From positions 412,237 through 476,236 of the IMG/VR virus record IMGVR_UViG_3300032236_002285: 64,000 bases of DNA; one strand, 5' to 3'. The position numbers were made by a program, and so were the translations under genes. The notes under the pieces were generated by a model. It saw nothing but the letters and a program-made list of their open reading frames with translations. It searched no databases and was not told where the DNA came from. Below, piece after piece: positions 22,422-64,000 of this stretch; within the stretch, counting starts at the first letter, position 1; the number at the start of each line of letters is the position of its first letter.

Positions 22422-23260
22422 TTCTCTGCTACTTTTCTAAAGTCAGTTAAGATAGTGTTTCTTAGTTCTCTGAACTCTTCATCTAATTCCTCCCAAGTCC
22501 ATCTTTTTCTTTTAATCTTATCCCAAATAAAGTTAGCACAAGAAAAATCTGTAATACGACCTGACGTTGCTATTTGAGTAGCAAACATAGGAATTCTCAA
22601 TGAGTGAAAAAGAGATTTAACTCCGGTGTGGTATTCGTCAGTTAGTTCTAATTTCTTTTTGCACTTGACCCAGCTATTAGAACTTATATGAGAAGTTGCG
22701 TGTCTGAGTTTAGCTAAGTTGATTTTGAAATTATCAAACTTGATAGTTTCTTTTAACTTAGCCCAATCTGGTGCCCAAATACATTCTAGATTGTTTATAC
22801 GATGCCATTCTAAATCAGCTTTGAACTTATCAGGAGTGTAAACGTGAATGTTGAATAAACCATTACGAATCTCAGTTGATTCAACAGAGTTGTTAGCGAT
22901 CATAATAATATCCCAATCAGAATCAGAGGTAGCTGTTCCGTATACCTGAGACCCGAAGATGTACACGTTAAAGACCCGACTTGGGTGTATCTTTGATGCT
23001 TTAATTATTGTTTCTAATGTTGGTATCATTATCTTATCTATTTTAATATTTCTTACTGCTGATGGATCTAAACTCTCTAAAATCCCCTCAATACAATCTT
23101 GACAAAGAATTGAAACTCCACCATCTAATGTGTGTATAGAAGCACACTTCACAACGTGAGAGTCACAACCATCACATATCTTATTATCATCAACAAACAT
23201 TAGAGATGCTTTAAGTACTTGTGGTCTTTCTGGAAACTTAGATAAGTGTATTTTTCTCAT
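22418..23260 (-). CDS. Zn-finger/C-tag module fused to DNA pol-beta-like nucleotidyltransferase
   Basis: CDGC..CQDC, internal RNIKIDKI, then YIFGSQVYGTATSDSDWDII (GS..YG....SDxD). Confidence 0.8.
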   Translation of the reverse strand: MRKIHLSKFPERPQVLKASLMFVDDNKICDGCDSHVVKCASIHTLDGGVSILCQDCIEGILESLDPSAVRNIKIDKIMIPTLETIIKASKIHPSRVFNVYIFGSQVYGTATSDSDWDIIMIANNSVESTEIRNGLFNIHVYTPDKFKADLEWHRINNLECIWAPDWAKLKETIKFDNFKINLAKLRHATSHISSNSWVKCKKKLELTDEYHTGVKSLFHSLRIPMFATQIATSGRITDFSCANFIWDKIKRKRWTWEELDEEFRELRNTILTDFRKVAEK

Positions 23261-23478
23261 ATTCCTAATTCTTTTAACTTGTCGTCTCTTAATTTACTAA
23301 GCAATTCATACTTACTACGAATGAATCTTGTTTCACCAATACAATTACCATTATCATCTTCTAAATCAAGACCTCTAATGTCATCATCACCTGTAATAGT
23401 GAACTGATGTCCTTTCTTATATACTTTACCGTTAAATTCAAAGTCCTCTAAAAAAACTACTCTGTCTCCAATTCTCAT
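23257..23478 (-). CDS. SH3-like small protein, C-tag
   Basis: IGDRVVF..KKGHQFTIT; ends RDDKLKELGI. Confidence 0.7.
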   Translation of the reverse strand: MRIGDRVVFLEDFEFNGKVYKKGHQFTITGDDDIRGLDLEDDNGNCIGETRFIRSKYELLSKLRDDKLKELGI

Positions 23479-23717
23479 TTTAATATTTTATTTATTTGTT
23501 GTTCTCTAAATTCTTCTAACGTCATAAAATGTTTAGCATCCATCTTCCTAAACTTACCATCATCACACTTGATAACATATGATGGTGCTACAGGTTTTAA
23601 TGTAACTGGATCATAAATAACAGGAGTCAATTCACACTCATAAAAGCTACCTGGCTTTACATAGTAAGCCATTTCATCAACTGGTGATATAGTATCTTTA
23701 AGATAGAGTGTAGCCAT
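23475..23717 (-). CDS. Small protein, C-tag
   Basis: Ends REQQINKILK; TATCTTTG 4 nt upstream of ATG. Confidence 0.7.
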   Translation of the reverse strand: MATLYLKDTISPVDEMAYYVKPGSFYECELTPVIYDPVTLKPVAPSYVIKCDDGKFRKMDAKHFMTLEEFREQQINKILK

Positions 23718-23721
23718 TTTA

Positions 23722-23729
23722 CAAAGATA
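23722..23729 (-). promoter_or_regulatory. Bacteroidota sigma70 -7 element
   Basis: TATCTTTG-TAAA-ATG. Confidence 0.65.
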
Positions 23730-23740
23730 GTTATTTTTAT

Positions 23741-23974
23741 TTAGATTCCTAATTCACTTAACTTTTTATCTCTATCCTCTTTAACTGAACAAGATTCACA
23801 TTTTGTAGGCTCTCCTCTGAATCCACCTTTATATAGGTCTAATTCTTTTTTACAAGATTCACAAAGCTCACCAATACCAATTGAAAATAATTCATCAGAA
23901 TCATATTTACCATATGACTTAGGTTCTTTCAAATCAAGATGTAAAATTGTTTTGATAAGATCTACAAATTTCAT
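23741..23974 (-). CDS. Zn-finger small protein, C-tag
   Basis: CESC..CESC; ends RDKKLSELGI. Confidence 0.7.
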   Translation of the reverse strand: MKFVDLIKTILHLDLKEPKSYGKYDSDELFSIGIGELCESCKKELDLYKGGFRGEPTKCESCSVKEDRDKKLSELGI

Positions 23975-24198
23975 ATACCTAATTCATTTAGTTTATCTTC
24001 TCTTAAATCTACTATATCAATACAATCTTCTGGTATTATAGCCCAACTAGTCAAACCATGTGACTTAATAACACGGTAATATTCATCTTTGTCATTAAGA
24101 CCAACCTCAAATACTTCACCCACTTTATCATGATACCAATATCTGTCTGTACTAGATTCTGAGTAATCACAAGAGCATTTTATAATTTTTACTTTCAT
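23971..24198 (-). CDS. SH3-like small protein, C-tag
   Basis: MKVKII..KVGEVFEV; ends REDKLNELGI. Confidence 0.7.
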   Translation of the reverse strand: MKVKIIKCSCDYSESSTDRYWYHDKVGEVFEVGLNDKDEYYRVIKSHGLTSWAIIPEDCIDIVDLREDKLNELGI

Positions 24199-24482
24199 AT
24201 TCCTAAATCATTTAGCTTAATATCTCTATCTAATTCAGTTGAGATATTTTTTAACTTCTTTGATAGAAACCACATTAAGCCAGAATCACCAAACTGATAT
24301 GGTTCTTCGGGCCAAGAGTCTCTATCTTTTGAGTTCATCTGTCTTGCTTCTTCGCACCATTCTTCTGGTATCAATTTATAGATTTCTTCATCCAAGTCAT
24401 TACAACCGTGATTATCAAATTCATCTTTAGCCATCATCAACATCTTTGATGATAACTCTAATAGCAATTTTATATCTTTCAT
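24195..24482 (-). CDS. Small protein, C-tag
   Basis: Ends RDIKLNDLGI. Confidence 0.7.
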   Translation of the reverse strand: MKDIKLLLELSSKMLMMAKDEFDNHGCNDLDEEIYKLIPEEWCEEARQMNSKDRDSWPEEPYQFGDSGLMWFLSKKLKNISTELDRDIKLNDLGI

Positions 24483-24706
24483 ATCCCTATGTGTTTAAGT
24501 TTCTTTTGTCTTAACAAGTTTAAGTATTCTGACTTTAATAAACAAAGAGTATGTCCATCCATTTGTCTATTTGGTACATCAAATGAAACTAAAATATCAT
24601 TCTCTCTTTGAGAGATAGTATGAATTTTAATATCCATTGGATTTTCTAAACCAATGTTCCATTTGTATAAACAAATGTCATATAACAACTCTTCATCTAA
24701 TATCAT
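24479..24706 (-). CDS. Small protein, C-tag
   Basis: Ends RQKKLKHIGI. Confidence 0.7.
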   Translation of the reverse strand: MILDEELLYDICLYKWNIGLENPMDIKIHTISQRENDILVSFDVPNRQMDGHTLCLLKSEYLNLLRQKKLKHIGI

Positions 24707-25065
24707 ATACCCAAACCATTTAACTTTTGATCTCTCTTATATAACAAAGAAACTTCAATGTTATTATCTTCTGGATAACTTAAAACATTTTGTAAGTAGT
24801 CATAAACTTCTTGAGTTCTACCTTCGTCTGATTCATATCCATAAAGATATCCACCTCTGAATATTCTACCATCAGATGGATCATCAATCTCACCTTGAGC
24901 AGTTAGTATCAATGATTCTATTTCACCTTCATCAATACCAAAAGATTTTAATTGATTAAGTAAATCAATCAAATCTTCCAATCTTTCTTTATAGTCCCAA
25001 CCCCAGTTGCCTCTAAGGTCTAATTGTAAGTGACCAATTGCGGTTTTCAATTCTTCTATATTCAT
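24703..25065 (-). CDS. Small protein, C-tag
   Basis: Ends RDQKLNGLGI. Confidence 0.7.
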   Translation of the reverse strand: MNIEELKTAIGHLQLDLRGNWGWDYKERLEDLIDLLNQLKSFGIDEGEIESLILTAQGEIDDPSDGRIFRGGYLYGYESDEGRTQEVYDYLQNVLSYPEDNNIEVSLLYKRDQKLNGLGI

Positions 25066-42477: not shown

Positions 42478-43281
42478 TTATTTATCTATATTTGATAAGA
42501 TATTATTTAATTTATTATCTCTTACTCTTTGATTGATTAATTTCAATAATTCTTCTTCTTTTTCTGGATAATAGCGAGCTAACCCAAATGGCTCAAACTG
42601 CATATTATCAATCAAATCTTGATTAACATTTAACTTAAACTTATGCCTAATCGAATCATTATATTTTTTAACAAACTCAGTTGATCTATCAACTACTAAA
42701 CCACCACCTGTTTGAAACTTCCAGAACCTAAATAACATCAAGCTTCTTGATAAAACAGAGTGCTCGAAATAAAAGTTATCTCTTTGTTCATCAGTCATTG
42801 GTAGTTTAGGTGACACACTACTTAAATGTAAATCAGCATTGTAAATATAAATAGCGTCATTAATTAGATAGAAAAATGATTCTACAAAACTAGTAGCAGG
42901 TGATAGAAGATTTTCTCTAACATTTGTATCAAATGGTCTTTGACGATTCCACTCTTCAGTAGCCATCTTACTTAAATGTAAACATTCATCGTAATAAGAT
43001 TGTGTCATTTTGAACTTAGAATATTTATCAAAGACATATTTATACTTTTGCGGATAAAGATATTCTAACCAGTCAACTTCTTTTAACATTTGTTTAAGTG
43101 CTAACGATTGTTCTTTAGTTGCTTTAGGTATACCATATTTTTTATACCAGTTTTTGCGAGATTGAATTTTATAATTATCGAATTCAAACCAATCTAATTG
43201 AACAACTAAAAGTTCTTTTACACCAAGATTTGTATTATCGTTTGGAACTCTATCTATAATCTTTAACTCTGGAAATTTCAT
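42478..43281 (-). CDS. Hypothetical protein, C-tag
   Basis: RDNKLNNIL near end. Confidence 0.7.
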   Translation of the reverse strand: MKFPELKIIDRVPNDNTNLGVKELLVVQLDWFEFDNYKIQSRKNWYKKYGIPKATKEQSLALKQMLKEVDWLEYLYPQKYKYVFDKYSKFKMTQSYYDECLHLSKMATEEWNRQRPFDTNVRENLLSPATSFVESFFYLINDAIYIYNADLHLSSVSPKLPMTDEQRDNFYFEHSVLSRSLMLFRFWKFQTGGGLVVDRSTEFVKKYNDSIRHKFKLNVNQDLIDNMQFEPFGLARYYPEKEEELLKLINQRVRDNKLNNILSNIDK

Positions 43282-43892
43282 ATACCTAATTCATTTAACT
43301 TTTTACCACGGTCTTCACTAATAATCTGACCAATGATATCAGAACCAAAACAATTTATCAACTCAGAACGCTTACTATAGATATCATTTTGTTTGAAAAA
43401 TGTTTCTAAATCAGGTTGATTTTTAGTGATGAAGTTAATCCATTCATCACCAGAGTTTATATCAACTGGACAATTCCAATCACATGCAATAGGATGTGAT
43501 TTATCAAAAATAGGATAACTATTCCTAACACTCATTTTGATATTCAAATGCCAGTTAGATTTTAACTCCAGTAACCGCTTATTATCAGTTATAATCTGCA
43601 TAAGAGTACGACCAATCGCAATAACTTTTATCTCACCTTTTGTAGTAAGTGTATTAAAATAATACTTTGTGGACCTACTTATCTCCCTGTTCATAAATTT
43701 TTCATTAGTAGATCTATGATAGTAGATTTTTGAAACCCATTTGTACTCTGGATCATAAAGAACACTAAGCTGGCCAGTATCACCTTGATACATTAAACTA
43801 TCAACTTTTGTTACCCATTGAATTTTACCATCAACTATTCTTGGGATAAGTTTAATGATATCACCATCTTCTAATTTATGAATTTTTATCAT
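43278..43892 (-). CDS. Hypothetical protein, C-tag
   Basis: Ends RGKKLNELGI. Confidence 0.7.
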   Translation of the reverse strand: MIKIHKLEDGDIIKLIPRIVDGKIQWVTKVDSLMYQGDTGQLSVLYDPEYKWVSKIYYHRSTNEKFMNREISRSTKYYFNTLTTKGEIKVIAIGRTLMQIITDNKRLLELKSNWHLNIKMSVRNSYPIFDKSHPIACDWNCPVDINSGDEWINFITKNQPDLETFFKQNDIYSKRSELINCFGSDIIGQIISEDRGKKLNELGI

Positions 43893-49964: not shown

Positions 49965-50500
49965 AATAGTGCTTTTAATTTAATTGTTCTTTGTAATTGA
50001 ATATCATGTGGATACTTCTTTGCTTCTTTCAATATTACTGAAGCAACCCACTCTTCTAATGTTACTGACTTACCTTTGATATCTAACATACCATCTTTAT
50101 AAGAATACCAGTAACCATAAGAATCATCTGATATCATATCTTTATGAATATCATTCATATAAACCGTTATCCAAGAATCACCAAAAATAAATCTTTGAGT
50201 AAATACCGTTTTATCCTTTCTTTTCAAAGATTTCATTGCCGTAACATTCAACTCTAGTGACCAATCATTAAACACCCGTTCAATATGCTTCAACATCACA
50301 GATGGTCTTTTACTAAGTATTAATGTCTTATCAACACGACCATCTACATAATGAACCACATGATATGAATCTTCATCCCACTTAGTTAAGTAATCACCTT
50401 CTACTGCACGACTAACCGTTTCAGTTGAAATTGTAGAAACTTCTTCAAGCCACTTGCGAAGCTGAATATCTCTTTGCGAATTATGTATTTGTAAATCCAT
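49961..50500 (-). CDS. Hypothetical protein, C-tag
   Basis: Ends RTIKLKALL. Confidence 0.7.
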   Translation of the reverse strand: MDLQIHNSQRDIQLRKWLEEVSTISTETVSRAVEGDYLTKWDEDSYHVVHYVDGRVDKTLILSKRPSVMLKHIERVFNDWSLELNVTAMKSLKRKDKTVFTQRFIFGDSWITVYMNDIHKDMISDDSYGYWYSYKDGMLDIKGKSVTLEEWVASVILKEAKKYPHDIQLQRTIKLKALL

Positions 50501-50889
50501 TATATTCCTATTTGTTCTAATTTTTTATTTCTTAACCACTCATTATATAATGATTCAAATGCTTCATCATCCCATTGAAAACCAAAGATATAAGTTGAAC
50601 CACCACACCATCTTGACCAAACATCATAAAATAAATTCCAAGATTTAAATAACTTTTCTAATGACTCAGCTTCTTCCCTTGTAGTGTATAATTGAAAACC
50701 TGACTCAGATAAGTACATCATTAAAACATCAATCTTATGTGAACGGTTGCTCCAGTTTTCTAAGTACCACTCACCTTTCAAGTCTTTAACTTGTTGCTTT
50801 ATCTCAGGTAAATGATGGTCACAATATCCCTTTGTAACAATATCAAATACCTCAAAAGGTTTTAGTTTCCTAATTATACGCCAACTCAT
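50500..50889 (-). CDS. Hypothetical protein, C-tag
   Basis: Ends RNKKLEQIGI. Confidence 0.7.
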   Translation of the reverse strand: MSWRIIRKLKPFEVFDIVTKGYCDHHLPEIKQQVKDLKGEWYLENWSNRSHKIDVLMMYLSESGFQLYTTREEAESLEKLFKSWNLFYDVWSRWCGGSTYIFGFQWDDEAFESLYNEWLRNKKLEQIGI

Positions 50890-51158
50890 ATTCCTAACTT
50901 ATTTAGTTTTAAATCTCTTTCACCAGCCAAATCCACAAAACACTCAATTGGTACAAACTCTTCATGAAAGTAATAAGGACCTTTTAACTTAACACATATT
51001 CTATCCGGAAAATGAAAATCAACATCAGTTACTTTATATTTTTCACCTATGATTAAACGCTCATTATCATAATCACCACCTATATAACCAATAGAATAAG
51101 AATTTAACTTAACACAAGTTAAAATATCACCTATTTTGAAATCTTTATATGTTTTCAT
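50886..51158 (-). CDS. SH3-like small protein, C-tag
   Basis: IGDILTCV..LIIGEKYKV; ends RDLKLNKLGI. Confidence 0.7.
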   Translation of the reverse strand: MKTYKDFKIGDILTCVKLNSYSIGYIGGDYDNERLIIGEKYKVTDVDFHFPDRICVKLKGPYYFHEEFVPIECFVDLAGERDLKLNKLGI

Positions 51159-51544
51159 ATACCTAACTCACTTAATATTTTATCACGCTTAATCGCTTCA
51201 TCTGAATCAAAGTAAATATCACCACGAAGATAAAACTCCATCGTCTCAGTATAGTTTTGACCATGTTGTGATGAACGAAACTGAACCGTTAACCTCTTTG
51301 CTTTAGCAACCAAATCTGGACAATCCAATATCTTTGATTTTAACTGCTCACGAATATCCTTTTTAACCCAATTCATCAACTCATGTGTTAAACACGAACC
51401 GTTCATTGTACTGCGCTCAACTTCTTCATAAGCATCCTGATATCGTGTAGGTAATCTAAACTCTAAAGTATCAACCTGCCAAAACATCCACCAATACTTG
51501 CGGTAAACCGCATAACCCTTATTATGTTTTTTAATATAACCCAT
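51155..51544 (-). CDS. Hypothetical protein, C-tag
   Basis: Ends RDKILSELGI. Confidence 0.7.
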   Translation of the reverse strand: MGYIKKHNKGYAVYRKYWWMFWQVDTLEFRLPTRYQDAYEEVERSTMNGSCLTHELMNWVKKDIREQLKSKILDCPDLVAKAKRLTVQFRSSQHGQNYTETMEFYLRGDIYFDSDEAIKRDKILSELGI

Positions 51545-52043
51545 CTAATATCTTATTTAAAACATTATCTCTTCTTAAAGCAACATAGTCAAAGTATTCA
51601 TCTACCAAGCGAACCGTATAAACAAAACACGGCTTACCTAAACTATTACCACCTTTACCTTTAGCAGCACCTAATCTATACAATTCATCATCAGATAATA
51701 AACAAAATGAATTAATTTGACTATCTGAACAAAGGCATTGAAAGTAAGGCATATCTATCTTCTTGGTATATAAATCATGAAATTCTTTAGTAGTTTTATA
51801 ACCAGGTATCACCTCATGTAAAGTTTCTTCAGTATAACCCTTACGAATCCACTCAATTGAATTACAAACCAATCCATTGTAATACCAATACTTATCATAA
51901 TCAGTAATAATCTGAGTTGATTTAAAAACAATTTTACCAAGATACTCTTGACCAGGTATAAGTATCTCACCCCAATGAGCCGCCATTGATTTCTTACACT
52001 TCAATGTCAAAGATTCTCCTAATTTTGTTTTTTCTAAGTTCAT
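51531..52043 (-). CDS. Hypothetical protein, C-tag (start uncertain)
   Basis: LKCKK..LIPGQEY; RDNVLNKIL near end. Confidence 0.65.
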   Translation of the reverse strand: MNLEKTKLGESLTLKCKKSMAAHWGEILIPGQEYLGKIVFKSTQIITDYDKYWYYNGLVCNSIEWIRKGYTEETLHEVIPGYKTTKEFHDLYTKKIDMPYFQCLCSDSQINSFCLLSDDELYRLGAAKGKGGNSLGKPCFVYTVRLVDEYFDYVALRRDNVLNKILDGLY

Positions 52044-52116
52044 TTCTCAAAGTTTTAATTGTTTGCCTCATAGCACGAGCAAACGTTTCATCAGCTAATC
52101 CATTCATCCAACTCAT
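51994..52116 (-). CDS. 40-aa C-tag protein (not in ORF track)
   Basis: MSWMNGLADETF...LRKNKIRRIFDIEV*; ATGA-coupled to the ACP-like gene. Confidence 0.5.
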   Translation of the reverse strand: MSWMNGLADETFARAMRQTIKTLRNELRKNKIRRIFDIEV

Positions 52117-52403
52117 AAACCCAACTCTTCTATTTTCTTATTACGAAGATACGATTTAAATACCATCGGCTTTTTATTTCCTCCAATAAAAGCATCCACC
52201 ACTTCATCTGGAATAACAATGTCTAATCTTTTCTCTAGCTCCATTGCCAACTCAACACAATCTAAATCATCATAACCATTATCATTCCAAGTTTTATTCA
52301 TATCTAATGGATAACCTATCTTTTCATTAGCAACCTCCATCAAAATCTCTGGAGTTACCTTAACTATATCTGGACACTTTTCGATCATTTCTAATTCTGT
52401 CAT
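52113..52403 (-). CDS. Acyl carrier protein-like protein lacking the pantetheine serine, C-tag
   Basis: GYDDLDCVELAMELEKRLDIVIPDE versus ACP GxDSLDxVELxMxxE..F.IxIPDE; ends RNKKIEELGL. Confidence 0.8.
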   Translation of the reverse strand: MTELEMIEKCPDIVKVTPEILMEVANEKIGYPLDMNKTWNDNGYDDLDCVELAMELEKRLDIVIPDEVVDAFIGGNKKPMVFKSYLRNKKIEELGL

Positions 52404-52777
52404 AGTATTTGCTTTAATTTTTTATCTCTTATTTCTTGTAATAGTGAAGGTATATACTGACCCCACTTTATATAAATCTTCATCTTTTCAGCATCCCAAT
52501 CAAAATCATCAATTGATTTATAACTATTTTTGCCATATACCGCCGTGTGATGATTAATCAACATATCAATACACTCATTCATAAACACCTGACGAATTCC
52601 AATATCCGATATCTCACCAGCCCAATCTGTTAACTGCTTATGAAATTCAGACCACTCATTTAACTTTCTCATTCGCTTACTATGTTGACGGGTTTCTTTA
52701 AAGAATCTCCAAACTATTCCAACAATTACAAACAAAAACACTAAAAATAATGCCGCTTGTATAATCTTAAATATCAT
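52400..52777 (-). CDS. N-terminal TM protein, C-tag
   Basis: Ends RDKKLKQIL. Confidence 0.7.
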   Translation of the reverse strand: MIFKIIQAALFLVFLFVIVGIVWRFFKETRQHSKRMRKLNEWSEFHKQLTDWAGEISDIGIRQVFMNECIDMLINHHTAVYGKNSYKSIDDFDWDAEKMKIYIKWGQYIPSLLQEIRDKKLKQIL

Positions 52778-53067
52778 ATACCTAACTTATTTAACTTTTC
52801 TTGACGATTTATTAATTTAGTAATATCAACCAAATACCCTTTAGTAAAACAACCAGCAATAGTTAACCTAACACTCGTCATTTTATCCCAATCTATTGTA
52901 AATTCAGCATCATACTCTACCTTACCAAACACCACCTTAGGACCTTTATCTGAATACATATGAATAGTAATAATATCACCAATATCAAAATGATGATAAT
53001 AATGAACATCAGTATCTAAACAGATACTAACACCACCCTTCATTACTTCTAAATAATAAACCGTCAT
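52774..53067 (-). CDS. Small protein, C-tag
   Basis: Probable start ATG 53067, 6 nt after TATCTTTG; ends RQEKLNKLGI. Confidence 0.7.
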   Translation of the reverse strand: MTVYYLEVMKGGVSICLDTDVHYYHHFDIGDIITIHMYSDKGPKVVFGKVEYDAEFTIDWDKMTSVRLTIAGCFTKGYLVDITKLINRQEKLNKLGI

Positions 53068-55263: not shown

Positions 55264-55290
55264 TTATATACCTAATGACTCTAATTTATC
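55264..55290 (-). pseudogene. Orphan C-tag-coding remnant
   Basis: GAT AAA TTA GAG TCA TTA GGT ATA TAA (DKLESLGI*) directly after the stop of 55289..55534. Confidence 0.6.
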
Positions 55291-55534
55291 ATATACCTAA
55301 TGATTTTAGTTTTTTATCACGACTTTCGTCTAAGTTTAATTCTGTATCGCGCCAGTGAGCGTATAAACTCTTAGTTTGTAATTGCTTTTTAGAACATCTT
55401 TTACATATTCGGAATAAGGTATGCTGCTGCCAACGGTAGGTTGAGCTGTTTTGCTTTTTTACCACAAGAGAGCCAAAAGAATCGCGATCTGTAAAGTATC
55501 GCCAGTTGTGGCCTATTATTTTACAAAGTATCAT
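55289..55534 (-). CDS. DUF1660-like small protein, C-tag
   Basis: CKIIGHNW..CKRC; ends RDKKLKSLGI. Confidence 0.7.
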   Translation of the reverse strand: MILCKIIGHNWRYFTDRDSFGSLVVKKQNSSTYRWQQHTLFRICKRCSKKQLQTKSLYAHWRDTELNLDESRDKKLKSLGI

Positions 55535-59819: not shown

Positions 59820-60061
59820 TATTTAATTTCTAATACGTTAAATACGTTATCAATCTTAGCTTCTCTGATATCTGCTAACTCTACATAATAGATAATAGCA
59901 GAGTATGATTCAATTGATCGATGAGGTCCAGAAGAAACACCTATTGAGTATTCTGTTTTGATAATCTGTCTGATATCAATTTTTTGTAGAAAGTCATTAA
60001 CCGCAACTTCTAATGTATGAGTATGGTCCTCATTAAATATCTTTACTTTAGCATTTATCAT
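59819..60061 (-). CDS. Small protein, C-tag
   Basis: REAKIDNVF near end. Confidence 0.65.
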   Translation of the reverse strand: MINAKVKIFNEDHTHTLEVAVNDFLQKIDIRQIIKTEYSIGVSSGPHRSIESYSAIIYYVELADIREAKIDNVFNVLEIK

Positions 60062-60315
60062 ATACCTAGTTCTTTTAATTTCTTATCTCTTTCTTGTTCT
60101 ACATTCAGCGCAACATTACGCCAATCCGTTTTTTCATCACCAGAATGTGCCACTCTAACTTGATTAATAAAACACCTTGGACAATATCTAAATTCAGTAT
60201 TTACTGGAAAGGTATATGATGGTATTACTCTATGTGTTAAATTAACAGGTGATGTTATATGGGGAACATCTTCTTTATAGTAGTTCCACTTATGACCAAA
60301 CAACTTACACTTCAT
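60058..60315 (-). CDS. DUF1660-like small protein, C-tag
   Basis: MKCKLFGHKW..CPRC; ends RDKKLKELGI. Confidence 0.7.
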   Translation of the reverse strand: MKCKLFGHKWNYYKEDVPHITSPVNLTHRVIPSYTFPVNTEFRYCPRCFINQVRVAHSGDEKTDWRNVALNVEQERDKKLKELGI

Positions 60316-60553: not shown

Positions 60554-60775
60554 TTACTTTAATTGTATCATAGAAACAGACTCTACACCTCTGTAAATAA
60601 GAATTGTAGTTGAGTCATTTAATTGTACTTTATATAAACCGTGATCTATTTCATCCATTACTTTTTCTACTTTAGTATTAGATGAAGGTGCGGGTGAGTT
60701 GTTTTCAGTTGTTACCACTGGTGTGTTACAAGCAAAAAGACATAGTGTGATTAGAATGATAAGTATATTTTTCAT
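60554..60775 (-). CDS. Small lipoprotein
   Basis: MKNILIILITLCLFA-C lipobox. Confidence 0.7.
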   Translation of the reverse strand: MKNILIILITLCLFACNTPVVTTENNSPAPSSNTKVEKVMDEIDHGLYKVQLNDSTTILIYRGVESVSMIQLK

Positions 60776-60835
60776 AATGTAAATATAAGATAATTAATTG
60801 AATAAACAAAATAGATATAAAATATAAAAGTTTAT

Positions 60836-61132
60836 ATGATTATATATAAAGGTGTTTCTTATAACTCTACTAAATTAATTTGCACTAGTAAGCTATCTTT
60901 AATGTTAAGCTACCCTAATTATAACAAATTAGAAATAGGTAAGATATATGATGGTTTCTTAGTTTATGTTTATGGTAATGGTACATCTGGTTGTGTTGAT
61001 AAACCAAATGGAGATAATACTCAACCATGTGGTTGGTATATAGATGGAGTTAGTAGTTCTATAAATGAGAACTTTGGTCTTGAGTTTTTTAAGCCACTTA
61101 GAGATTACAACTTATCATTGATAAATTTATAA
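60836..61132 (+). CDS. SH3-like small protein, degenerate C-tag
   Basis: KLIC..LEIGKIYD; ends RDYNLSLINL. Confidence 0.6.
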   Translation: MIIYKGVSYNSTKLICTSKLSLMLSYPNYNKLEIGKIYDGFLVYVYGNGTSGCVDKPNGDNTQPCGWYIDGVSSSINENFGLEFFKPLRDYNLSLINL

Positions 61133-61354
61133 TATTCCTAACTTCTTTAGTTTCTTATCACGAGTATATTCAATTGATTCAAATCTTTTATGATGATAAA
61201 AACGTTTATTGCCATAATCATTAATAATAGCAAATGAATGGTCGCTAATAGAAACATTATCACCTAACACTTCATAAGCTTTACCAATAGTTAAATTGAC
61301 ATGTTCATCTTGAGCACCATCAACTTCACCATTATTAATACAAACTACTTTCAT
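61127..61354 (-). CDS. SH3-like (DUF6501-like) protein, C-tag
   Basis: MKVVCIN..LTIGKAYEV..IINDYG; ends RDKKLKKLGIL. Confidence 0.7.
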   Translation of the reverse strand: MKVVCINNGEVDGAQDEHVNLTIGKAYEVLGDNVSISDHSFAIINDYGNKRFYHHKRFESIEYTRDKKLKKLGIL

Positions 61355-61626
61355 ATTCCTAACTGATCTAATTTTTGATTTCTATATTCTTCTAAGGTAA
61401 TAAAATTATTAGGGTCAACATCCATAGTTGTTTCTAATTTATCATGATGGATAATAAGATACGACTTACCATGACCCCTTCCTGTGCATTTATCATAAAC
61501 TTCAAAGATATCACCTTTATAATAAGCTCTTTCAATATAAACACCTTTATAATAATAACCTTTCTTAGGTATCGCCCGAAATGCCTTTAGGGGCAGCGGC
61601 GCGTCATTAATAGCAATCACTTTCAT
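61351..61626 (-). CDS. SH3-like small protein, C-tag
   Basis: MKVIAIN..KGDIFEV; ends RNQKLDQLGI. Confidence 0.7.
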   Translation of the reverse strand: MKVIAINDAPLPLKAFRAIPKKGYYYKGVYIERAYYKGDIFEVYDKCTGRGHGKSYLIIHHDKLETTMDVDPNNFITLEEYRNQKLDQLGI

Positions 61627-61841
61627 AGAATCTTATCTAATTGTCTCCTTCGCCATTCATCTAATTTAAGGAATGTGCTTTTATAGTAATACTCTTTGTG
61701 ACCTCTATCATTTATTATCCACCAGTTGTAATTATCAATACCCGGTAGGCCGCATCCTGGCAGGACATCATATATCTTACCATAGGTTAATTCATATTGT
61801 AAACCTTGTGACCTGTATTTCTTAATACAAACTACTTTCAC
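61623..61841 (-). CDS. SH3-like (DUF6501-like) protein, C-tag
   Basis: MKVVCIK..LTYGKIYDV..IINDRG; ends RRRQLDKIL. Confidence 0.7.
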   Translation of the reverse strand: MKVVCIKKYRSQGLQYELTYGKIYDVLPGCGLPGIDNYNWWIINDRGHKEYYYKSTFLKLDEWRRRQLDKIL

Positions 61842-62059
61842 TTCAATATCTTTTTAATCTTCTCTTCTCTGTGGCAAGCTTCACAAATTAACTTACTATC
61901 ACCAATAGTTAAATCACCTGTTGGTCTCAATATAACATGAATTATAATATTTACAATGGTAACAAATCTACTAGGTTTCTTAACAAAGTATTTATCTTTT
62001 ACTAAATCAAATTTAGATTGACAATCGGGACAAGTTCTTTCAGTTATTCTCTTACTCAT
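61838..62059 (-). CDS. Zn-ribbon protein, C-tag
   Basis: CPDC..CEAC; ends REEKIKKILK. Confidence 0.7.
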   Translation of the reverse strand: MSKRITERTCPDCQSKFDLVKDKYFVKKPSRFVTIVNIIIHVILRPTGDLTIGDSKLICEACHREEKIKKILK

Positions 62060-62184
62060 ATGCCTAACTCATTTAACTTTTCTTCTCTAAGAATAGATGT
62101 TATATCATTAATACATCTAATTGGTTTTAATTCACCATCAACTAAAGATATGTAATAACTATTATCTTTAACAGGATAATTCAT
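62056..62184 (-). CDS. 42-aa C-tag protein (not in ORF track)
   Basis: MNYPVKDNSYYISLVDGELKPIRCINDITSILREEKLNELGI*. Confidence 0.7.
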   Translation of the reverse strand: MNYPVKDNSYYISLVDGELKPIRCINDITSILREEKLNELGI

Positions 62185-62428
62185 TCTTTTTCCAGCTTCT
62201 TAGAGTATTATTACCAATCATTAAATTCAATTTATTCAATTGAATTTCATTGTCTAATCTAAATTTTATACCATAAACATTTTTCAAAAAGCTCATACCG
62301 AAATCATTTTCTAATAAAGTTTCAATAGGTGTACAATCAAATTCTTTTTTTACATTAGCAATAATGTTATTGTAAGAATTTATAAAATCTTCTTTAGATT
62401 GAAATTTAGATTTATAAATAAAATTCAT
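62168..62428 (-). CDS. Hypothetical protein
   Basis: 86-aa ORF. Confidence 0.55.
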   Translation of the reverse strand: MNFIYKSKFQSKEDFINSYNNIIANVKKEFDCTPIETLLENDFGMSFLKNVYGIKFRLDNEIQLNKLNLMIGNNTLRSWKKNELSC

Positions 62429-62474
62429 TTTAAATATATCATAATTAATGTGTAAAGTTGTAAATATTTATACC

Positions 62475-62501
62475 TACAAAATTCCGCATCGTTTTTCTGT
62501 A
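62475..62501 (+). repeat. 27-bp imperfect palindrome, copy 5
   Basis: tacaaaatt-ccgcatcgt-ttttctgta. Confidence 0.75.
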
Positions 62502-62505
62502 GTTT

Positions 62506-62778
62506 TTAAATGCCTAACGCTTCGAGTTTATCTTGTCTAATAGATTGTGTATCTAATATCATAGTGCCACTATAATGACCTGTTACCATATTACGAAGTT
62601 GTTCATATGAATAGTTAATAATACGACCATTTTCCCATTCAATAGCAACTTCATACTCAAACGGAGCATTAACAACTTTCCCATGTGTATTTAATTTAGA
62701 GAGTGTATTTTCTTTATCAACCATTTCCTCTATCCAAATAACTTTATCACCTATATTTAGTTTCATAGAATCAATCAT
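62506..62778 (-). CDS. SH3/KOW-like small protein, C-tag
   Basis: LNIGDKVIW; ends RQDKLEALGI. Confidence 0.7.
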   Translation of the reverse strand: MIDSMKLNIGDKVIWIEEMVDKENTLSKLNTHGKVVNAPFEYEVAIEWENGRIINYSYEQLRNMVTGHYSGTMILDTQSIRQDKLEALGI

Positions 62779-62866
62779 TATAAAATATTTAATTCAACTT
62801 CTTTGATTTCTAATTGGTCATTTGTGTACACTTCATGAGTGTATATCTACCCTAAATTAGGGTGTA

Positions 62867-63322
62867 TTAAGCCCCTACCTTCCAAGCATTCTTAACAATC
62901 TTTCTAATTTGATTAGCATCTGCTTTATTACCAATCACTGAACCATCTTTAATAGTGAAAGCATGACCAGTTACACGAATAATATAAGTACCTTTATTAT
63001 ATTCTTTAACAAAAGTACCTACTGACATTTGTGATTTACCACCATTGGTCTTTAAATATTTACTATCAATCTTTTTAGTTACTTTACGATTAAGGCGAGT
63101 TTTAGCATCAGACATTCTATCCATGCCTTGAGGAAACCCACGAGTGCCTTTACGCATCTGACGATTGAATGTATCAGCTACCCAAGTATGAGCTTTATCA
63201 TATTCCATACCATAAGCAGAAGCAACAGCACGAACAACGCAGTCAGCTCGTTCTGAACGTGCTAAAGCAGAATCGGAATAACCTTTAATAGCTTCGGAGG
63301 TGGCTGTGTATGGTATCTTCAT
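62867..63322 (-). CDS. Conserved-type phage hypothetical protein (DCVVRA motif)
   Basis: ERADCVVRAVASA..GH AFTIKDG, suggestive of a papain-like Cys/His pair; TATCTTTG upstream at 63342-63349. Confidence 0.6.
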   Translation of the reverse strand: MKIPYTATSEAIKGYSDSALARSERADCVVRAVASAYGMEYDKAHTWVADTFNRQMRKGTRGFPQGMDRMSDAKTRLNRKVTKKIDSKYLKTNGGKSQMSVGTFVKEYNKGTYIIRVTGHAFTIKDGSVIGNKADANQIRKIVKNAWKVGA

Positions 63323-63373
63323 AACTTGTAGTGATTTTATACAAAGATACGAATAATTTACCTAACTAGCAAG

Positions 63374-64000
63374 TTAATACTTTATGAATATATTCGATAC
63401 ATTATCCACTATTAAATAATAAGTGCCTGGTACAAACCAACTAACATCTATTGAACCACAACCCATCGGCATATATTTAGAATACCAGATTCTACCATCT
63501 ATTGACATAATACTTACTTTACTATATTTAGGTAAGGTAACTACTATCTTACTATTAGTAGGGTTTGGATAAAAACTGAATTTAGGTAATTGATTATCTA
63601 CAATAACCAATGGACTACATTCTGTAATAGTATCATATAAAGCATCAAATGCTGTTACTGGCATATTATCATGTGACCAAGATTTCCTTATAGTTGGTGG
63701 CATTAAATCATCATAACACCAACAAATAGAATCACTGGTTGAAACGGTGACATAAGTGGTTAATGTGGCAAGTGTTATTGGTGGGAAAGGTAGTAACACT
63801 TTATATTTAAGTGTGGTATCACCATAAATAGTAAATGTAGTATCTAATAATAAAGTCCTGGCAGCATCACTGGTGAATACAGCCATTTCTACATTTGATT
63901 TACAATTACTAGGGTTGATAATAGTTTCATTAATATAGTAAGCTTGTGAGTAAGCATTTATTGATATTAGTAAACTAAGTAAGGTTAATAGTTTTTTCAT
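63374..64000 (-). CDS. Secreted protein with Sec signal peptide and T9SS type-A C-terminal sorting domain
   Basis: MKKLLTLLSLLISINAYSQ signal; FYPNPT..I...VSIMSIDGR..IDVS..PGTYYLIV..FIK CTD. Confidence 0.88.
   Translation of the reverse strand: MKKLLTLLSLLISINAYSQAYYINETIINPSNCKSNVEMAVFTSDAARTLLLDTTFTIYGDTTLKYKVLLPFPPITLATLTTYVTVSTSDSICWCYDDLMPPTIRKSWSHDNMPVTAFDALYDTITECSPLVIVDNQLPKFSFYPNPTNSKIVVTLPKYSKVSIMSIDGRIWYSKYMPMGCGSIDVSWFVPGTYYLIVDNVSNIFIKY

What the first reader, a model, noticed from the sequence alone, without database searches (positions are those of the whole stretch)
60554..64000. Phage cargo for the host type IX secretion system, plus a small lipoprotein
63374..64000 has a Sec signal peptide, a short Cys-containing passenger and a canonical type-A T9SS CTD (YPNP..GxYxL..K). 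Established: such CTDs route Bacteroidota proteins to the cell surface. Inference: the phage displays a protein on, or jams, the host T9SS, which could affect gliding, receptor exposure or superinfection. The lipoprotein at 60554 may act similarly in the envelope.
Basis: partly seen in the sequence, partly recalled or inferred. Interest (0 to 1): 0.6.

Follow-up and report, generated by a model that had tools for sequence, protein, structure and literature searches.

The report
Megaphage-encoded type IX secretion cargo
A very large phage of Bacteroidota carries a small gene with both address labels (a Sec signal peptide and a T9SS C-terminal domain) that send a protein out through the host's type IX secretion system, plus a small lipoprotein from a phage-only family; the reading is right, but phage-borne T9SS cargo has been reported before.

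Summary
ORF 63374..64000(-), 208 aa, has a Sec signal peptide, a 4-Cys passenger of about 120 aa, and a type-A T9SS C-terminal domain (CTD). TIGR04183 scores 25.3 bits against a cut-off of 23. Pfam PF18962 scores 25.6, 1.4 bits under its threshold. ORF 60554..60775(-) has a lipobox (L-F-A-C16).

The context is phage, not host. The window is the end of a 476-kb IMG/VR record labelled 'provirus'. The source contig and a second assembly continue with the same phage-type genes beyond the window. The record has a Gp23-like capsid gene and a large terminase, and no tyrosine integrase. Its terminase is 78% identical to the 635-642-kb Mahaphage genomes, which are predicted to infect Bacteroidetes.

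The phage encodes at least six T9SS substrates: two type A and four type B. One type-B protein is only a signal peptide plus a CTD. All four published Mahaphage genomes over 634 kb also carry type-A CTD ORFs.

The passenger has no relative among 1.84 billion representative proteins except a 93% variant, and dN/dS between the two is 0.25. The lipoprotein belongs to a family of 67 clusters; both contexts inspected are phage-like. Its function is unknown and it is not spanin-like.

Phage T9SS cargo was already described (Bellas 2020; de Jonge 2019), so this is a new member of a known kind. Secretion and any exclusion or 'jamming' role remain untested.

The parts
63374..64000 (-). Complete 208-aa gene for a T9SS type-A cargo protein (signal peptide + orphan passenger + CTD)
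   Evidence: ORF. TIGR04183 25.3 bits against cut-off 23, 27.3 bits in the six-frame search. PF18962 25.6 against 27. An identical protein is on 4 contigs. dN/dS is 0.25 against the 93% variant.
63947..64000 (-). Sec signal peptide, residues 1-18. Likely cleavage at A-Y-S|Q leaves an N-terminal Gln, as in the Bacteroidetes Q-rule.
   Evidence: Read from the sequence. Crude hydropathy scan. Q-rule: PMC5837995, listed. The cleavage site is inferred; no signal-peptide predictor was available.
63584..63946 (-). Passenger, residues 19 to about 139, with four Cys (33, 93, 95, 128); probably a small beta-sandwich
   Evidence: No relative among 1.84e9 representatives except P0002 at 93%, and only that one in the word search. 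The ESM Atlas's own model (pLDDT 0.68) has only generic beta-sandwich look-alikes, TM 0.50-0.59. The AF2 single-sequence model failed (pLDDT 35).
63377..63583 (-). Type-A T9SS C-terminal sorting domain, residues 140-208 (YPNP 144-147, D-G-R 168-170, GTYYL 192-196, K207)
   Evidence: HMM stretch 144-203. PDB 7PZJ C-terminal domain at E 0.0034. The conserved Gly of the beta3-beta4 loop and the Lys of the last strand are the functionally tested motifs in PMC11285876.
60554..60775 (-). 73-aa lipoprotein gene, first gene after a short divergent intergenic region
   Evidence: ORF. Family of 67 clusters. Alignments A1 and A2.
60728..60775 (-). Lipoprotein signal peptide with lipobox L-F-A-C16
   Evidence: Read from the sequence. 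C16 is at least 90% conserved in 68 sequences. One of only 2 lipobox candidates in the 476-kb record.
60557..60673 (-). Conserved C-terminal mini-domain of the lipoprotein (residues 35-73): a four-stranded beta-sheet behind a variable tether of about 18 aa
   Evidence: Invariant G46, L47, K49, I60, Y61, G63, E65, M69. AF2 on 68 sequences gives pLDDT 77-89 for residues 31-73 and strands 35-42, 45-51, 57-62, 67-72. Fold matches are weak only.
62867..63322 (-). 151-aa gene directly downstream of the cargo gene (context only): phage family of unknown function
   Evidence: phrog_3754 at E 1.2e-21. No Pfam family. The adjacency is kept on three contigs but not in variant L008.

Best explanation
The 208-aa gene is an accessory gene of a very large T4-like phage (at least 481 kb) of the Mahaphage clade that infects a Bacteroidota host.

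Proposed pathway:
1. Sec exports the product into the periplasm.
2. Signal peptidase I cuts it, probably before Gln19, and the host would cyclise that Gln to pyroglutamate.
3. The host T9SS recognises the C-terminal type-A domain and carries the protein across the outer membrane.
4. The CTD is removed. The mature beta-rich, Cys-containing passenger of about 120 aa is then released or fixed to the cell surface.

The phage brings no T9SS parts of its own that I could find, so it depends on the host machine. The gene is one of at least six T9SS substrates in this genome. It sits in a fast-changing block of small co-oriented genes.

My preferred function is remodelling of the infected cell's surface during a long infection. 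The most likely purpose is to lower adsorption by other or sibling phages (superinfection exclusion or receptor masking).

The 73-aa gene encodes a separately transcribed envelope lipoprotein. It has a flexible tether and a conserved four-stranded beta mini-domain, and belongs to a family seen so far only in phage-like contigs. I read it as a stand-alone envelope factor, possibly for exclusion, and not as a lysis spanin.

Shown: the domains, the phage context, purifying selection and recurrence in the clade.
Inferred: actual secretion, the cleavage sites, the surface location and every functional role.
For: Targeting signals:
- TIGR04183 is above its cut-off, and the CTD aligns to a solved CTD-bearing chain, 7PZJ.
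- The signal peptide and motifs were read from the sequence. The conserved Gly and Lys positions are those shown to matter in PMC11285876.
- Both type-A proteins and all three passenger-less type-B proteins have S|Q or A|Q cleavage sites, as in the Q-rule papers listed.

Phage identity:
- Baseplate wedge gene in the window, large terminase, Gp23-like capsid gene.
- No tyrosine integrase, while the control rang in all 14 genomes.
- Terminase 78.6% and 78.4% identical to LR756502.1 and LR745206.1. All genomes over 634 kb in that study fall in the Mahaphage clade and are predicted to replicate in Bacteroidetes (PMC7162821).

Flank:
- The source contig of 481,145 b and an ENA contig of 471,672 b continue with the same kind of genes.

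The gene is used, not decaying:
- It is intact on 4 contigs, and dN/dS is 0.25 for both type-A genes.

A wider T9SS programme:
- A second type-A gene, PF18962 33.8 bits.
- Four type-B genes over the cut-off.
- Type-A ORFs in all 4 published Mahaphage genomes checked, and type-B ORFs in the 2 closest.
- No PorV or PorU in the record.

Lipoprotein:
- for the family, for the fold, for phage-like contexts.
Against: - The Pfam score is 1.4 bits under its gathering threshold.
- No structure model of the cargo protein is usable.
- Host, expression and secretion are all unobserved. The read-mapping route was unavailable.
- CTDs can be species-specific (PMC11285876), so compatibility with the unknown host is assumed.
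- In the only variant, the last 8 or so codons are replaced and the conserved Lys is lost. So either that Lys is dispensable here or the variant is not secreted.
- Neither of the two closest published genomes has a homologue of this passenger, so whatever it does is not a core function.
- The exclusion role has no direct support.
Confidence: 0.7

Rival explanations
1. The gene is host DNA at the edge of an integrated prophage, so it is an ordinary bacterial T9SS substrate and not phage cargo.
For: IMG/VR labels the record 'provirus', and the record stops exactly at this gene's ATG. T9SS CTDs are a cellular hallmark. The neighbouring 310-aa cargo has full-length homologues at 31-32% identity in true chromosomal contexts (GroEL, peroxiredoxin, OMP) of two Bacteroidetes MAGs.
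Against: Beyond the boundary the contig continues for 4.9 kb, and for 5 kb more in the ENA contig. That stretch has the same GC (0.30 and 0.29 against 0.30). It has dense small ORFs without Pfam families, a phage RNase H (phrog_531, 5e-49), an 81%-identical paralogue of a window gene, and two more ORFs with the phage's own tail motif. In the ENA contig the gene lies at about 313 kb of 472 kb, with phage-type genes on both sides. There is no tyrosine integrase. Relatives are lytic-type T4-like megaphages.
Confidence: 0.04
2. The C-terminal domain is just a generic Ig-like beta-sandwich. It could belong to a periplasmic or membrane-associated phage protein that the T9SS does not recognise.
For: The scores are borderline: 25.3 against 23, and 25.6 against 27. 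Type-A CTDs have weak sequence signatures (PMC11285876). The L008 variant lacks the conserved terminal Lys.
Against: The domain sits at the very C-terminus, behind a Sec signal. It has YPNP, the loop Gly and the strand Lys in register. The same genome has five further CTD proteins with clear scores of 33.8 to 53.7 bits. Related megaphages have SP-passenger-CTD proteins of the same size scoring 42-49 bits.
Confidence: 0.1
3. The cargo proteins act mainly by occupying the T9SS. They compete with host substrates (adhesins such as SprB, enzymes) and so shut down gliding or receptor delivery. On this view the passenger itself has no activity.
For: This phage and its two closest relatives each encode a protein that is only a signal peptide plus a type-B CTD, with no passenger. 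The 208-aa passenger is small and an orphan. Papers titled on phage resistance through gliding-motility and T9SS gene mutations in Flavobacterium were listed (10.1101/2020.10.02.323337, PMC9804748); I read titles and abstracts only.
Against: The passenger is under purifying selection along its length, which a mere plug would not need. There is no evidence on expression level or on competition. Type A and type B use partly different partners (my own knowledge, not tested here).
Confidence: 0.12
4. The 73-aa lipoprotein is the outer-membrane spanin of the lysis cassette.
For: It is a small phage lipoprotein. There is a faint match to spanin2_2, limited to the signal peptide (12.3 bits, E 0.14). 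Rz1 and the colicin lysis protein appear among low-score Atlas feature look-alikes (0.77).
Against: The score is far below the cut-off of 100. No membrane-anchored partner gene is adjacent or overlapping, and the neighbours lack hydrophobic segments. Neighbours differ in every context examined. The conserved part is a folded beta mini-domain. By my own knowledge, Rz1-type spanins instead have a proline-rich extended chain.
Confidence: 0.08

Closest known systems
T9SS-tagged genes of 'Cryophage' (Bellas et al. 2020, PMC7468147)
   Same: Phage-encoded proteins with type-A T9SS sorting domains. They lie in variable genome regions and are proposed to use the host T9SS, with possible roles in competition or superinfection.
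   Different: Their passengers are recognisable (an endoglucanase, a GH39 and a PA14 protein). Here the passenger is a 120-aa orphan. The carrier here is a megaphage of at least 481 kb with six T9SS substrates, including type B. That paper called its case a 'unique occurrence'.
T9SS sorting-domain ORFs on crAss-BACON phage contigs (de Jonge et al. 2019, PMC6949934)
   Same: ORFs carrying a T9SS sorting domain in Bacteroidetes phage contigs.
   Different: Those are gut phage lineages with BACON repeats, located near head genes. There is no sequence relation to this protein.
Small SP-passenger-CTD ORFs of Mahaphage genomes LR756502.1 and LR745206.1
   Same: Same architecture and size: 186 and 199 aa, with a signal peptide, a beta-rich passenger of about 100 aa and a type-A CTD. 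They occur in phages whose terminase is 78% identical.
   Different: The passengers are unrelated by tblastn. The locus also differs: theirs lies next to a DnaJ-like gene. To my knowledge these ORFs have not been described as T9SS cargo.
Cellular type-A T9SS cargo (e.g. P. gingivalis RgpB; the CTD-bearing lipase chain 7PZJ)
   Same: A Sec signal plus a C-terminal Ig-like sorting domain, with the loop Gly and the strand Lys.
   Different: This one is encoded by a virus. Its passenger is far smaller than typical enzymes or adhesins and has no cellular homologue.
Phage exclusion lipoproteins (T5 Llp, phi80 Cor), recalled from my own knowledge
   Same: Small, stand-alone, phage-encoded lipoproteins of 60-80 aa. 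This is a plausible analogy for how the 73-aa protein might work.
   Different: No sequence or fold similarity was found. The target and the location in a Bacteroidota envelope are unknown. This is an analogy, not membership.

Membership tests
T9SS type-A CTD protein (TIGR04183 / PF18962) | Profile score above the curated cut-off | tested here: met
   TIGR04183 scores 25.3 bits against 23 and 27.3 bits in the genome search. Caveat: Pfam PF18962 scores 25.6 against a gathering score of 27, just under.
T9SS type-A CTD protein (TIGR04183 / PF18962) | Domain at the extreme C-terminus of the protein | tested here: met
   The HMM stretch covers residues 144-203 of 208.
T9SS type-A CTD protein (TIGR04183 / PF18962) | N-terminal Sec signal peptide | tested here: met
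   The sequence starts M-K-K, has a hydrophobic core and then A-Y-S|Q, and passes a crude hydropathy scan. No dedicated predictor was available.
T9SS type-A CTD protein (TIGR04183 / PF18962) | Conserved Gly in the beta3-beta4 loop and Lys in the last strand (functionally tested in P. gingivalis) | tested here: met
   D-G-R at 168-170 and K207, read from the sequence against PMC11285876. Variant P0002 lacks the Lys.
T9SS type-A CTD protein (TIGR04183 / PF18962) | Seven-stranded Ig-like beta-sandwich fold | tested here: inconclusive
   The AF2 single-sequence model is unusable (pLDDT 35). There is only a sequence alignment to the 7PZJ C-terminal domain, E 0.0034.
T9SS type-A CTD protein (TIGR04183 / PF18962) | Secretion depends on the T9SS, with CTD removal by PorU | not testable with these tools
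   This needs expression in wild-type and T9SS-mutant cells.
T9SS type-A CTD protein (TIGR04183 / PF18962) | The organism making the protein has a T9SS | not testable with these tools
   The host is unknown. The clade is predicted to infect Bacteroidetes. No PorV or PorU was found in the phage record. No PorP/SprF was found either, but that control was uninformative.
Bacterial lipoprotein (signal peptidase II substrate) | Lipobox with an invariant Cys after a hydrophobic signal | tested here: met
   L-F-A-C16. The Cys is at least 90% conserved in 68 sequences. Two members lack it.
Two-component spanin, outer-membrane subunit | Profile match, and an adjacent or embedded inner-membrane partner gene within a lysis cassette | tested here: not met
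   NF037951 scores 12.3 bits against a cut-off of 100, on the signal peptide only. The neighbours have no membrane segment. Neighbours are not conserved.
Integrated prophage ('provirus' label of the record) | Host genes flanking the element; an integrase | tested here: not met
   The flank beyond the boundary is phage-like. There is no PF00589 match, while the control rang in 14 of 14 genomes. Serine recombinases were not searched.
Mahaphage-clade megaphage (Al-Shayeb et al. 2020) | Large terminase groups with the clade's genomes; very large genome | tested here: met
   TerL is 78.6% and 78.4% identical to LR756502.1 and LR745206.1, and 41-44% to LR756504.1 and LR756501.1. The contig is 481 kb. 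No tree was built.

The most novel reading that the evidence does not exclude
Bacteroidota megaphages may run a dedicated T9SS programme. They would load the host secretion machine with their own mix of type-A and type-B substrates. That mix includes conserved proteins that are only a signal peptide plus a type-B CTD. These could act as decoys that outcompete host adhesins and receptor proteins for the translocon or its PorP/SprF-type partners. The result would be loss of gliding and a closed door to other phages during a long infection. The 208-aa orphan cargo and the tethered 73-aa lipoprotein would be further parts of this surface takeover.
Probability: 0.12. Interest if true: 0.75.

Novelty: new member of a known kind. 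Interest (0 to 1): 0.45.

Why it matters
It adds a clear case of a phage using its host's type IX secretion system, a Bacteroidota-specific machine. It also shows this is not a one-off. Every published Mahaphage genome over 634 kb that I checked carries such genes, and this phage carries six.

These domains are also a cheap, independent marker of host phylum for uncultured megaphages. They can mislead provirus-boundary callers as well, which is probably what happened to this record.

If any of these proteins alters surface receptors, gliding or T9SS throughput, it would be a new kind of superinfection exclusion. That would matter for phage therapy against flavobacterial fish pathogens, where several studies link phage resistance to T9SS and gliding genes.

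Tried and rejected
- AF2 on the 208-aa protein alone gave pLDDT 35, which is useless. No deeper alignment exists, because the passenger has only one near-identical relative.
- The ESM Atlas look-alikes of the passenger are generic beta-sandwiches, including a cupredoxin plus CTD cluster (TM 0.50-0.59). I do not read these as homology.
- tblastn against 50,697 phage records found nothing for the 208-aa protein, the 310-aa protein or the lipoprotein.
- Fold searches with the lipoprotein model gave no clear result. PDB Foldseek had no hit at E <= 0.001. The VIA wide search peaked at Z 4.5, with pilin-like rows caused by the signal helix. BFVD gave weak rows, a DUF6440 protein and a 79-aa 'Lipoprotein' at E about 4e-3 to 5e-3. 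The Atlas search peaked at TM 0.51. These are leads only.
- A PorP/SprF search in the phage found nothing, but the control rang nowhere, so that result is uninformative. PorV and PorU were not found.
- Promoter-like and terminator-like sites are no more frequent than in shuffled sequence. That scan does not cover Bacteroidota-type promoters.
- No Rfam family and no tRNA was found in the region.
- The ENA record behind L002 is not held, so I could not test whether the two long contigs close into one circle.
- One fetch from genomes failed on a size limit and was re-sent corrected.
No alternative genetic code was needed.

Full report
**1. What is in the sequence**

The region 58-64 kb is a dense run of small ORFs, nearly all on the minus strand.

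The ORF 63374..64000(-) is complete at 208 aa, and its ATG is the last triplet of the window. Its parts are:
- Residues 1-18: a classic Sec signal (M-K-K, then a hydrophobic core, then A-Y-S followed by Q).
- Residues 19 to about 139: a beta-rich passenger with Cys at 33, 93, 95 and 128.
- Residues 140-208: a type-A T9SS sorting domain.

NCBIfam TIGR04183 scores 25.3 bits (E 1.1e-5, cut-off 23). It scores 27.3 bits in a six-frame search of the whole record, where this is the only type-A hit. Pfam PF18962 gives 25.6 bits, just under its threshold of 27. The domain also aligns to the C-terminal domain of the solved 'Lipase' chain 7PZJ (E 0.0034).

The positions that mutagenesis showed to matter in P. 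gingivalis CTDs are both present. These are a Gly in the beta3-beta4 loop and a Lys in the last strand (PMC11285876). Here they are D-G-R 168-170 and K207.

The ORF 60554..60775(-) is 73 aa with lipobox L-F-A-C16.

**2. Phage or host?**

The window is the last 64 kb of a 476,236-b IMG/VR record labelled 'provirus'. The record is a phage:
- a baseplate wedge gene in the window;
- a 715-aa open frame matching the large terminase family;
- a 566-aa Gp23-like capsid gene;
- no tyrosine integrase, although the control rang in all 14 reference genomes.

The terminase is 78.6% and 78.4% identical to LR756502.1 (642 kb) and LR745206.1 (635 kb). It is 41-44% identical to LR756504.1 and LR756501.1 (636 and 735 kb). 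Genomes of this size in Al-Shayeb et al. 2020 all fall in the Mahaphage clade and are predicted to replicate in Bacteroidetes (PMC7162821).

The exact protein is on four contigs. The JGI source contig is 481,145 b, so 4,908 b beyond the window were trimmed away, exactly at this gene's start codon. An ENA contig of 471,672 b holds the gene near its middle and is 100% identical over 10.6 kb.

The sequence beyond the window looks like the same phage:
- GC is 0.30 and 0.29, against 0.30 for the window.
- ORFs are small and tightly packed, almost all without Pfam families.
- There is an RNase H of phage type (phrog_531, 5e-49).
- There is an 81%-identical paralogue of a window gene.
- Two more ORFs carry this phage's peculiar C-terminal tail motif.

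The 'provirus' boundary is most likely a caller artefact. It may have been triggered by the two host-like T9SS genes, but that cause is my inference.

The ENA contig runs 5 kb past the JGI contig's end without matching the start of the record. With relatives of 635-642 kb, the true genome is probably larger than 481 kb.

**3.

A second type-A gene of 310 aa lies 1.8 kb beyond the window (L003:3115-4047). PF18962 scores 33.8 bits, above threshold. It shares only the signal peptide and the CTD with the 208-aa protein.

Unlike the 208-aa protein, it has cellular homologues. Full-length matches at 31-32% identity sit in genuine chromosomal contexts (GroEL, peroxiredoxin, OMP barrel) of two Bacteroidetes MAGs.

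A crude scan for exported proteins led to four type-B CTD genes. All are above the TIGR04131 and PF13585 thresholds:
- Three encode proteins of 935-987 aa, one of them with PKD and Ig_7 repeats.
- One encodes a 111-aa protein that is only a signal peptide followed by the CTD.

Comparison with relatives:
- All four published Mahaphage genomes carry at least one type-A ORF above the cut-off.
- The two closest have ORFs of 186 and 199 aa with the same signal-passenger-CTD layout.
- The two closest also carry type-B ORFs, including their own CTD-only proteins of about 110-116 aa.
- The cultured Tenacibaculum phage PTm1 has none.

Both type-A proteins and the three CTD-only proteins have Gln right after the likely cleavage site. 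That fits the Bacteroidetes Q-rule (PMC5837995, PMC10653852). The same has been noted for P. gingivalis phage proteins (PMC10367356).

No PorV or PorU was found in the phage. PorP/SprF was not found either, but that control was uninformative.

**4. The passenger**

The word search found one relative, P0002, at 93% identity. An exhaustive phmmer search of residues 20-143 against 1.84 billion representatives found only the same protein. There is no PHROG family and no hit in GenBank phages.

The Atlas's own model (pLDDT 0.68) resembles generic beta-sandwiches only. My AF2 run failed.

P0002 lies on a 15.8-kb contig of a variant phage. That contig keeps both type-A genes, while the genes between and around them differ. 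dN/dS is 0.25 for each gene, so both are under purifying selection.

The homology between the two phages breaks inside the last 8 or so codons of the cargo gene. The variant ends differently and lacks the terminal Lys.

**5. The lipoprotein**

This protein has a real family: 67 clusters of 55-98 aa.
- The lipobox Cys is at least 90% conserved.
- The tether is variable.
- The C-terminal module is almost invariant (G46, L47, K49, I60, Y61, G63, E65, M69).

AF2 with 68 sequences models the protein in three parts. These are the signal helix, a disordered tether (residues 16-30) and a four-stranded beta-sheet (residues 35-72, pLDDT 77-89). No convincing fold relative was found. There are only weak rows to a DUF6440 protein and to a 79-aa 'Lipoprotein' of an uncultured phage.

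The two contexts I could inspect are phage-like:
- an 816,658-b contig with small ORFs and the same RNase H;
- a 52.5-kb contig with Gp23, DnaB-like and SmpB genes.

Neighbours are not conserved, and no membrane-anchored partner gene is adjacent. The spanin profile match is negligible. I therefore reject a spanin role and regard it as a stand-alone envelope factor. An exclusion role like T5 Llp or phi80 Cor is an analogy from my own knowledge, not a finding.

**6. How it most likely works**

Shown: the two address labels, the phage context, selection, and recurrence in the clade.

Inferred: Sec export, cleavage before Q19, transport by the host T9SS, CTD removal, and release or surface attachment of a 120-aa domain.

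My preferred function is surface remodelling that limits further phage adsorption. It rests only on context:
- the genes lie in a variable block of small co-oriented genes;
- this phage carries many T9SS substrates;
- several Flavobacterium papers tie phage resistance to mutations in gliding and T9SS genes (titles and abstracts only).

The 'jamming' idea fits the CTD-only type-B proteins better than the 208-aa protein, because the latter's passenger is itself conserved.

**7. Comparison with what is known**

Phage-encoded T9SS cargo is already published. Bellas et al. 2020 found three variable genes with type-A sorting domains in 'Cryophage' and proposed hijacking of the host system. de Jonge et al. 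2019 noted T9SS sorting-domain ORFs on crAss-BACON contigs.

A search combining type IX secretion with huge, mega or jumbo phage terms listed 15 of 192 papers, and none of those 15 mentions type IX secretion. The megaphage angle therefore seems undescribed in the held library.

Verdict: a new member of a known kind. The added points are an orphan passenger, a six-gene T9SS set, CTD-only proteins, and a phage-only lipoprotein family.

**8. Limits**

- Signal-peptide cleavage sites were read by eye.
- Clade membership rests on terminase identity, not on a tree.

Noticed in passing
window 23257-25065, 43278-43892, 50500-53067, 55289-55534, 60058-60315, 61127-61626, 62056-62184, 62506-62778 (all minus strand); also L002:960-1202 and 1423-1647: Twenty-one small ORFs of the record, 17 of them in this window, end in the same tail: R-[DENQ]-x-K-[LI]-x-x-[LI]-G-I-stop. 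About 0.06 would be expected by chance. The codons vary synonymously, so the constraint is on the peptide. The protein bodies are mostly unrelated (DUF1660, ACP-like, or nothing). In 15 of the 21 the ORF ends ATA-TGA, which contains an ATG in the frame where a next gene would start. I found the motif in no other locus examined. It looks like a portable C-terminal tag for a shared partner, and it is unexplained.
   Followed up: partly
record G000 C1:254936-255271 (-), outside the window; L033:309-659 (-); L034:238-618 (+): Proteins that are only a signal peptide plus a type-B T9SS CTD, with no passenger. They occur in this phage (111 aa, CHU_C 53.7 bits) and in both closest Mahaphage genomes. 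They are candidate decoys for the T9SS.
   Followed up: partly
record G000 C1:320982-323789 (+), 233836-236799 (+), 249565-252501 (-), outside the window: Three secreted proteins of 935-987 aa with type-B T9SS CTDs. One has PKD and Ig_7 (CHU_C-associated) repeats, so it looks like an adhesin.
   Followed up: partly
L003:3115-4047 (+), 1.8 kb beyond the window's end: A second type-A T9SS cargo gene of 310 aa (PF18962 33.8 bits). It is conserved in variant L008 with dN/dS 0.25. It has full-length homologues at 31-32% identity in chromosomal contexts of two Bacteroidetes MAGs.
   Followed up: yes
window end (64000), equal to record end; L003:1-4908: The IMG/VR 'provirus' boundary falls exactly on the cargo gene's ATG and cuts off 4.9 kb of evidently phage DNA. 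There is no tyrosine integrase in the record. The label is probably a boundary-caller artefact.
   Followed up: yes
L002:1-5092: The ENA contig continues 5 kb past the end of the 481-kb JGI contig without matching the start of the record. With relatives of 635-642 kb, the genome is probably well above 481 kb, despite CheckV's estimate of 97% complete.
   Followed up: partly
L009 (JGI 3300071516, contig Ga0620986_00085, 816,658 b): A homologue of the lipoprotein sits on an 816.7-kb contig. Its local gene content is phage-like: small ORFs without families and the same RNase H. If the whole contig is phage, it would exceed the 735-kb record. Only 16 kb were seen.
   Followed up: no
window 62867-63322 (-): The 151-aa gene just downstream of the cargo gene belongs to phrog_3754 (E 1.2e-21), a family of unknown function, and has no Pfam family. 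It has a Cys early and a His late, which might suggest a small cysteine peptidase fold. That is speculation.
   Followed up: no
window 63374-63400; L008:8596-8624: The mosaic junction between this phage and the L008 variant lies inside the last 8 or so codons of the cargo gene. The variant gets a different last strand without the conserved Lys.
   Followed up: partly
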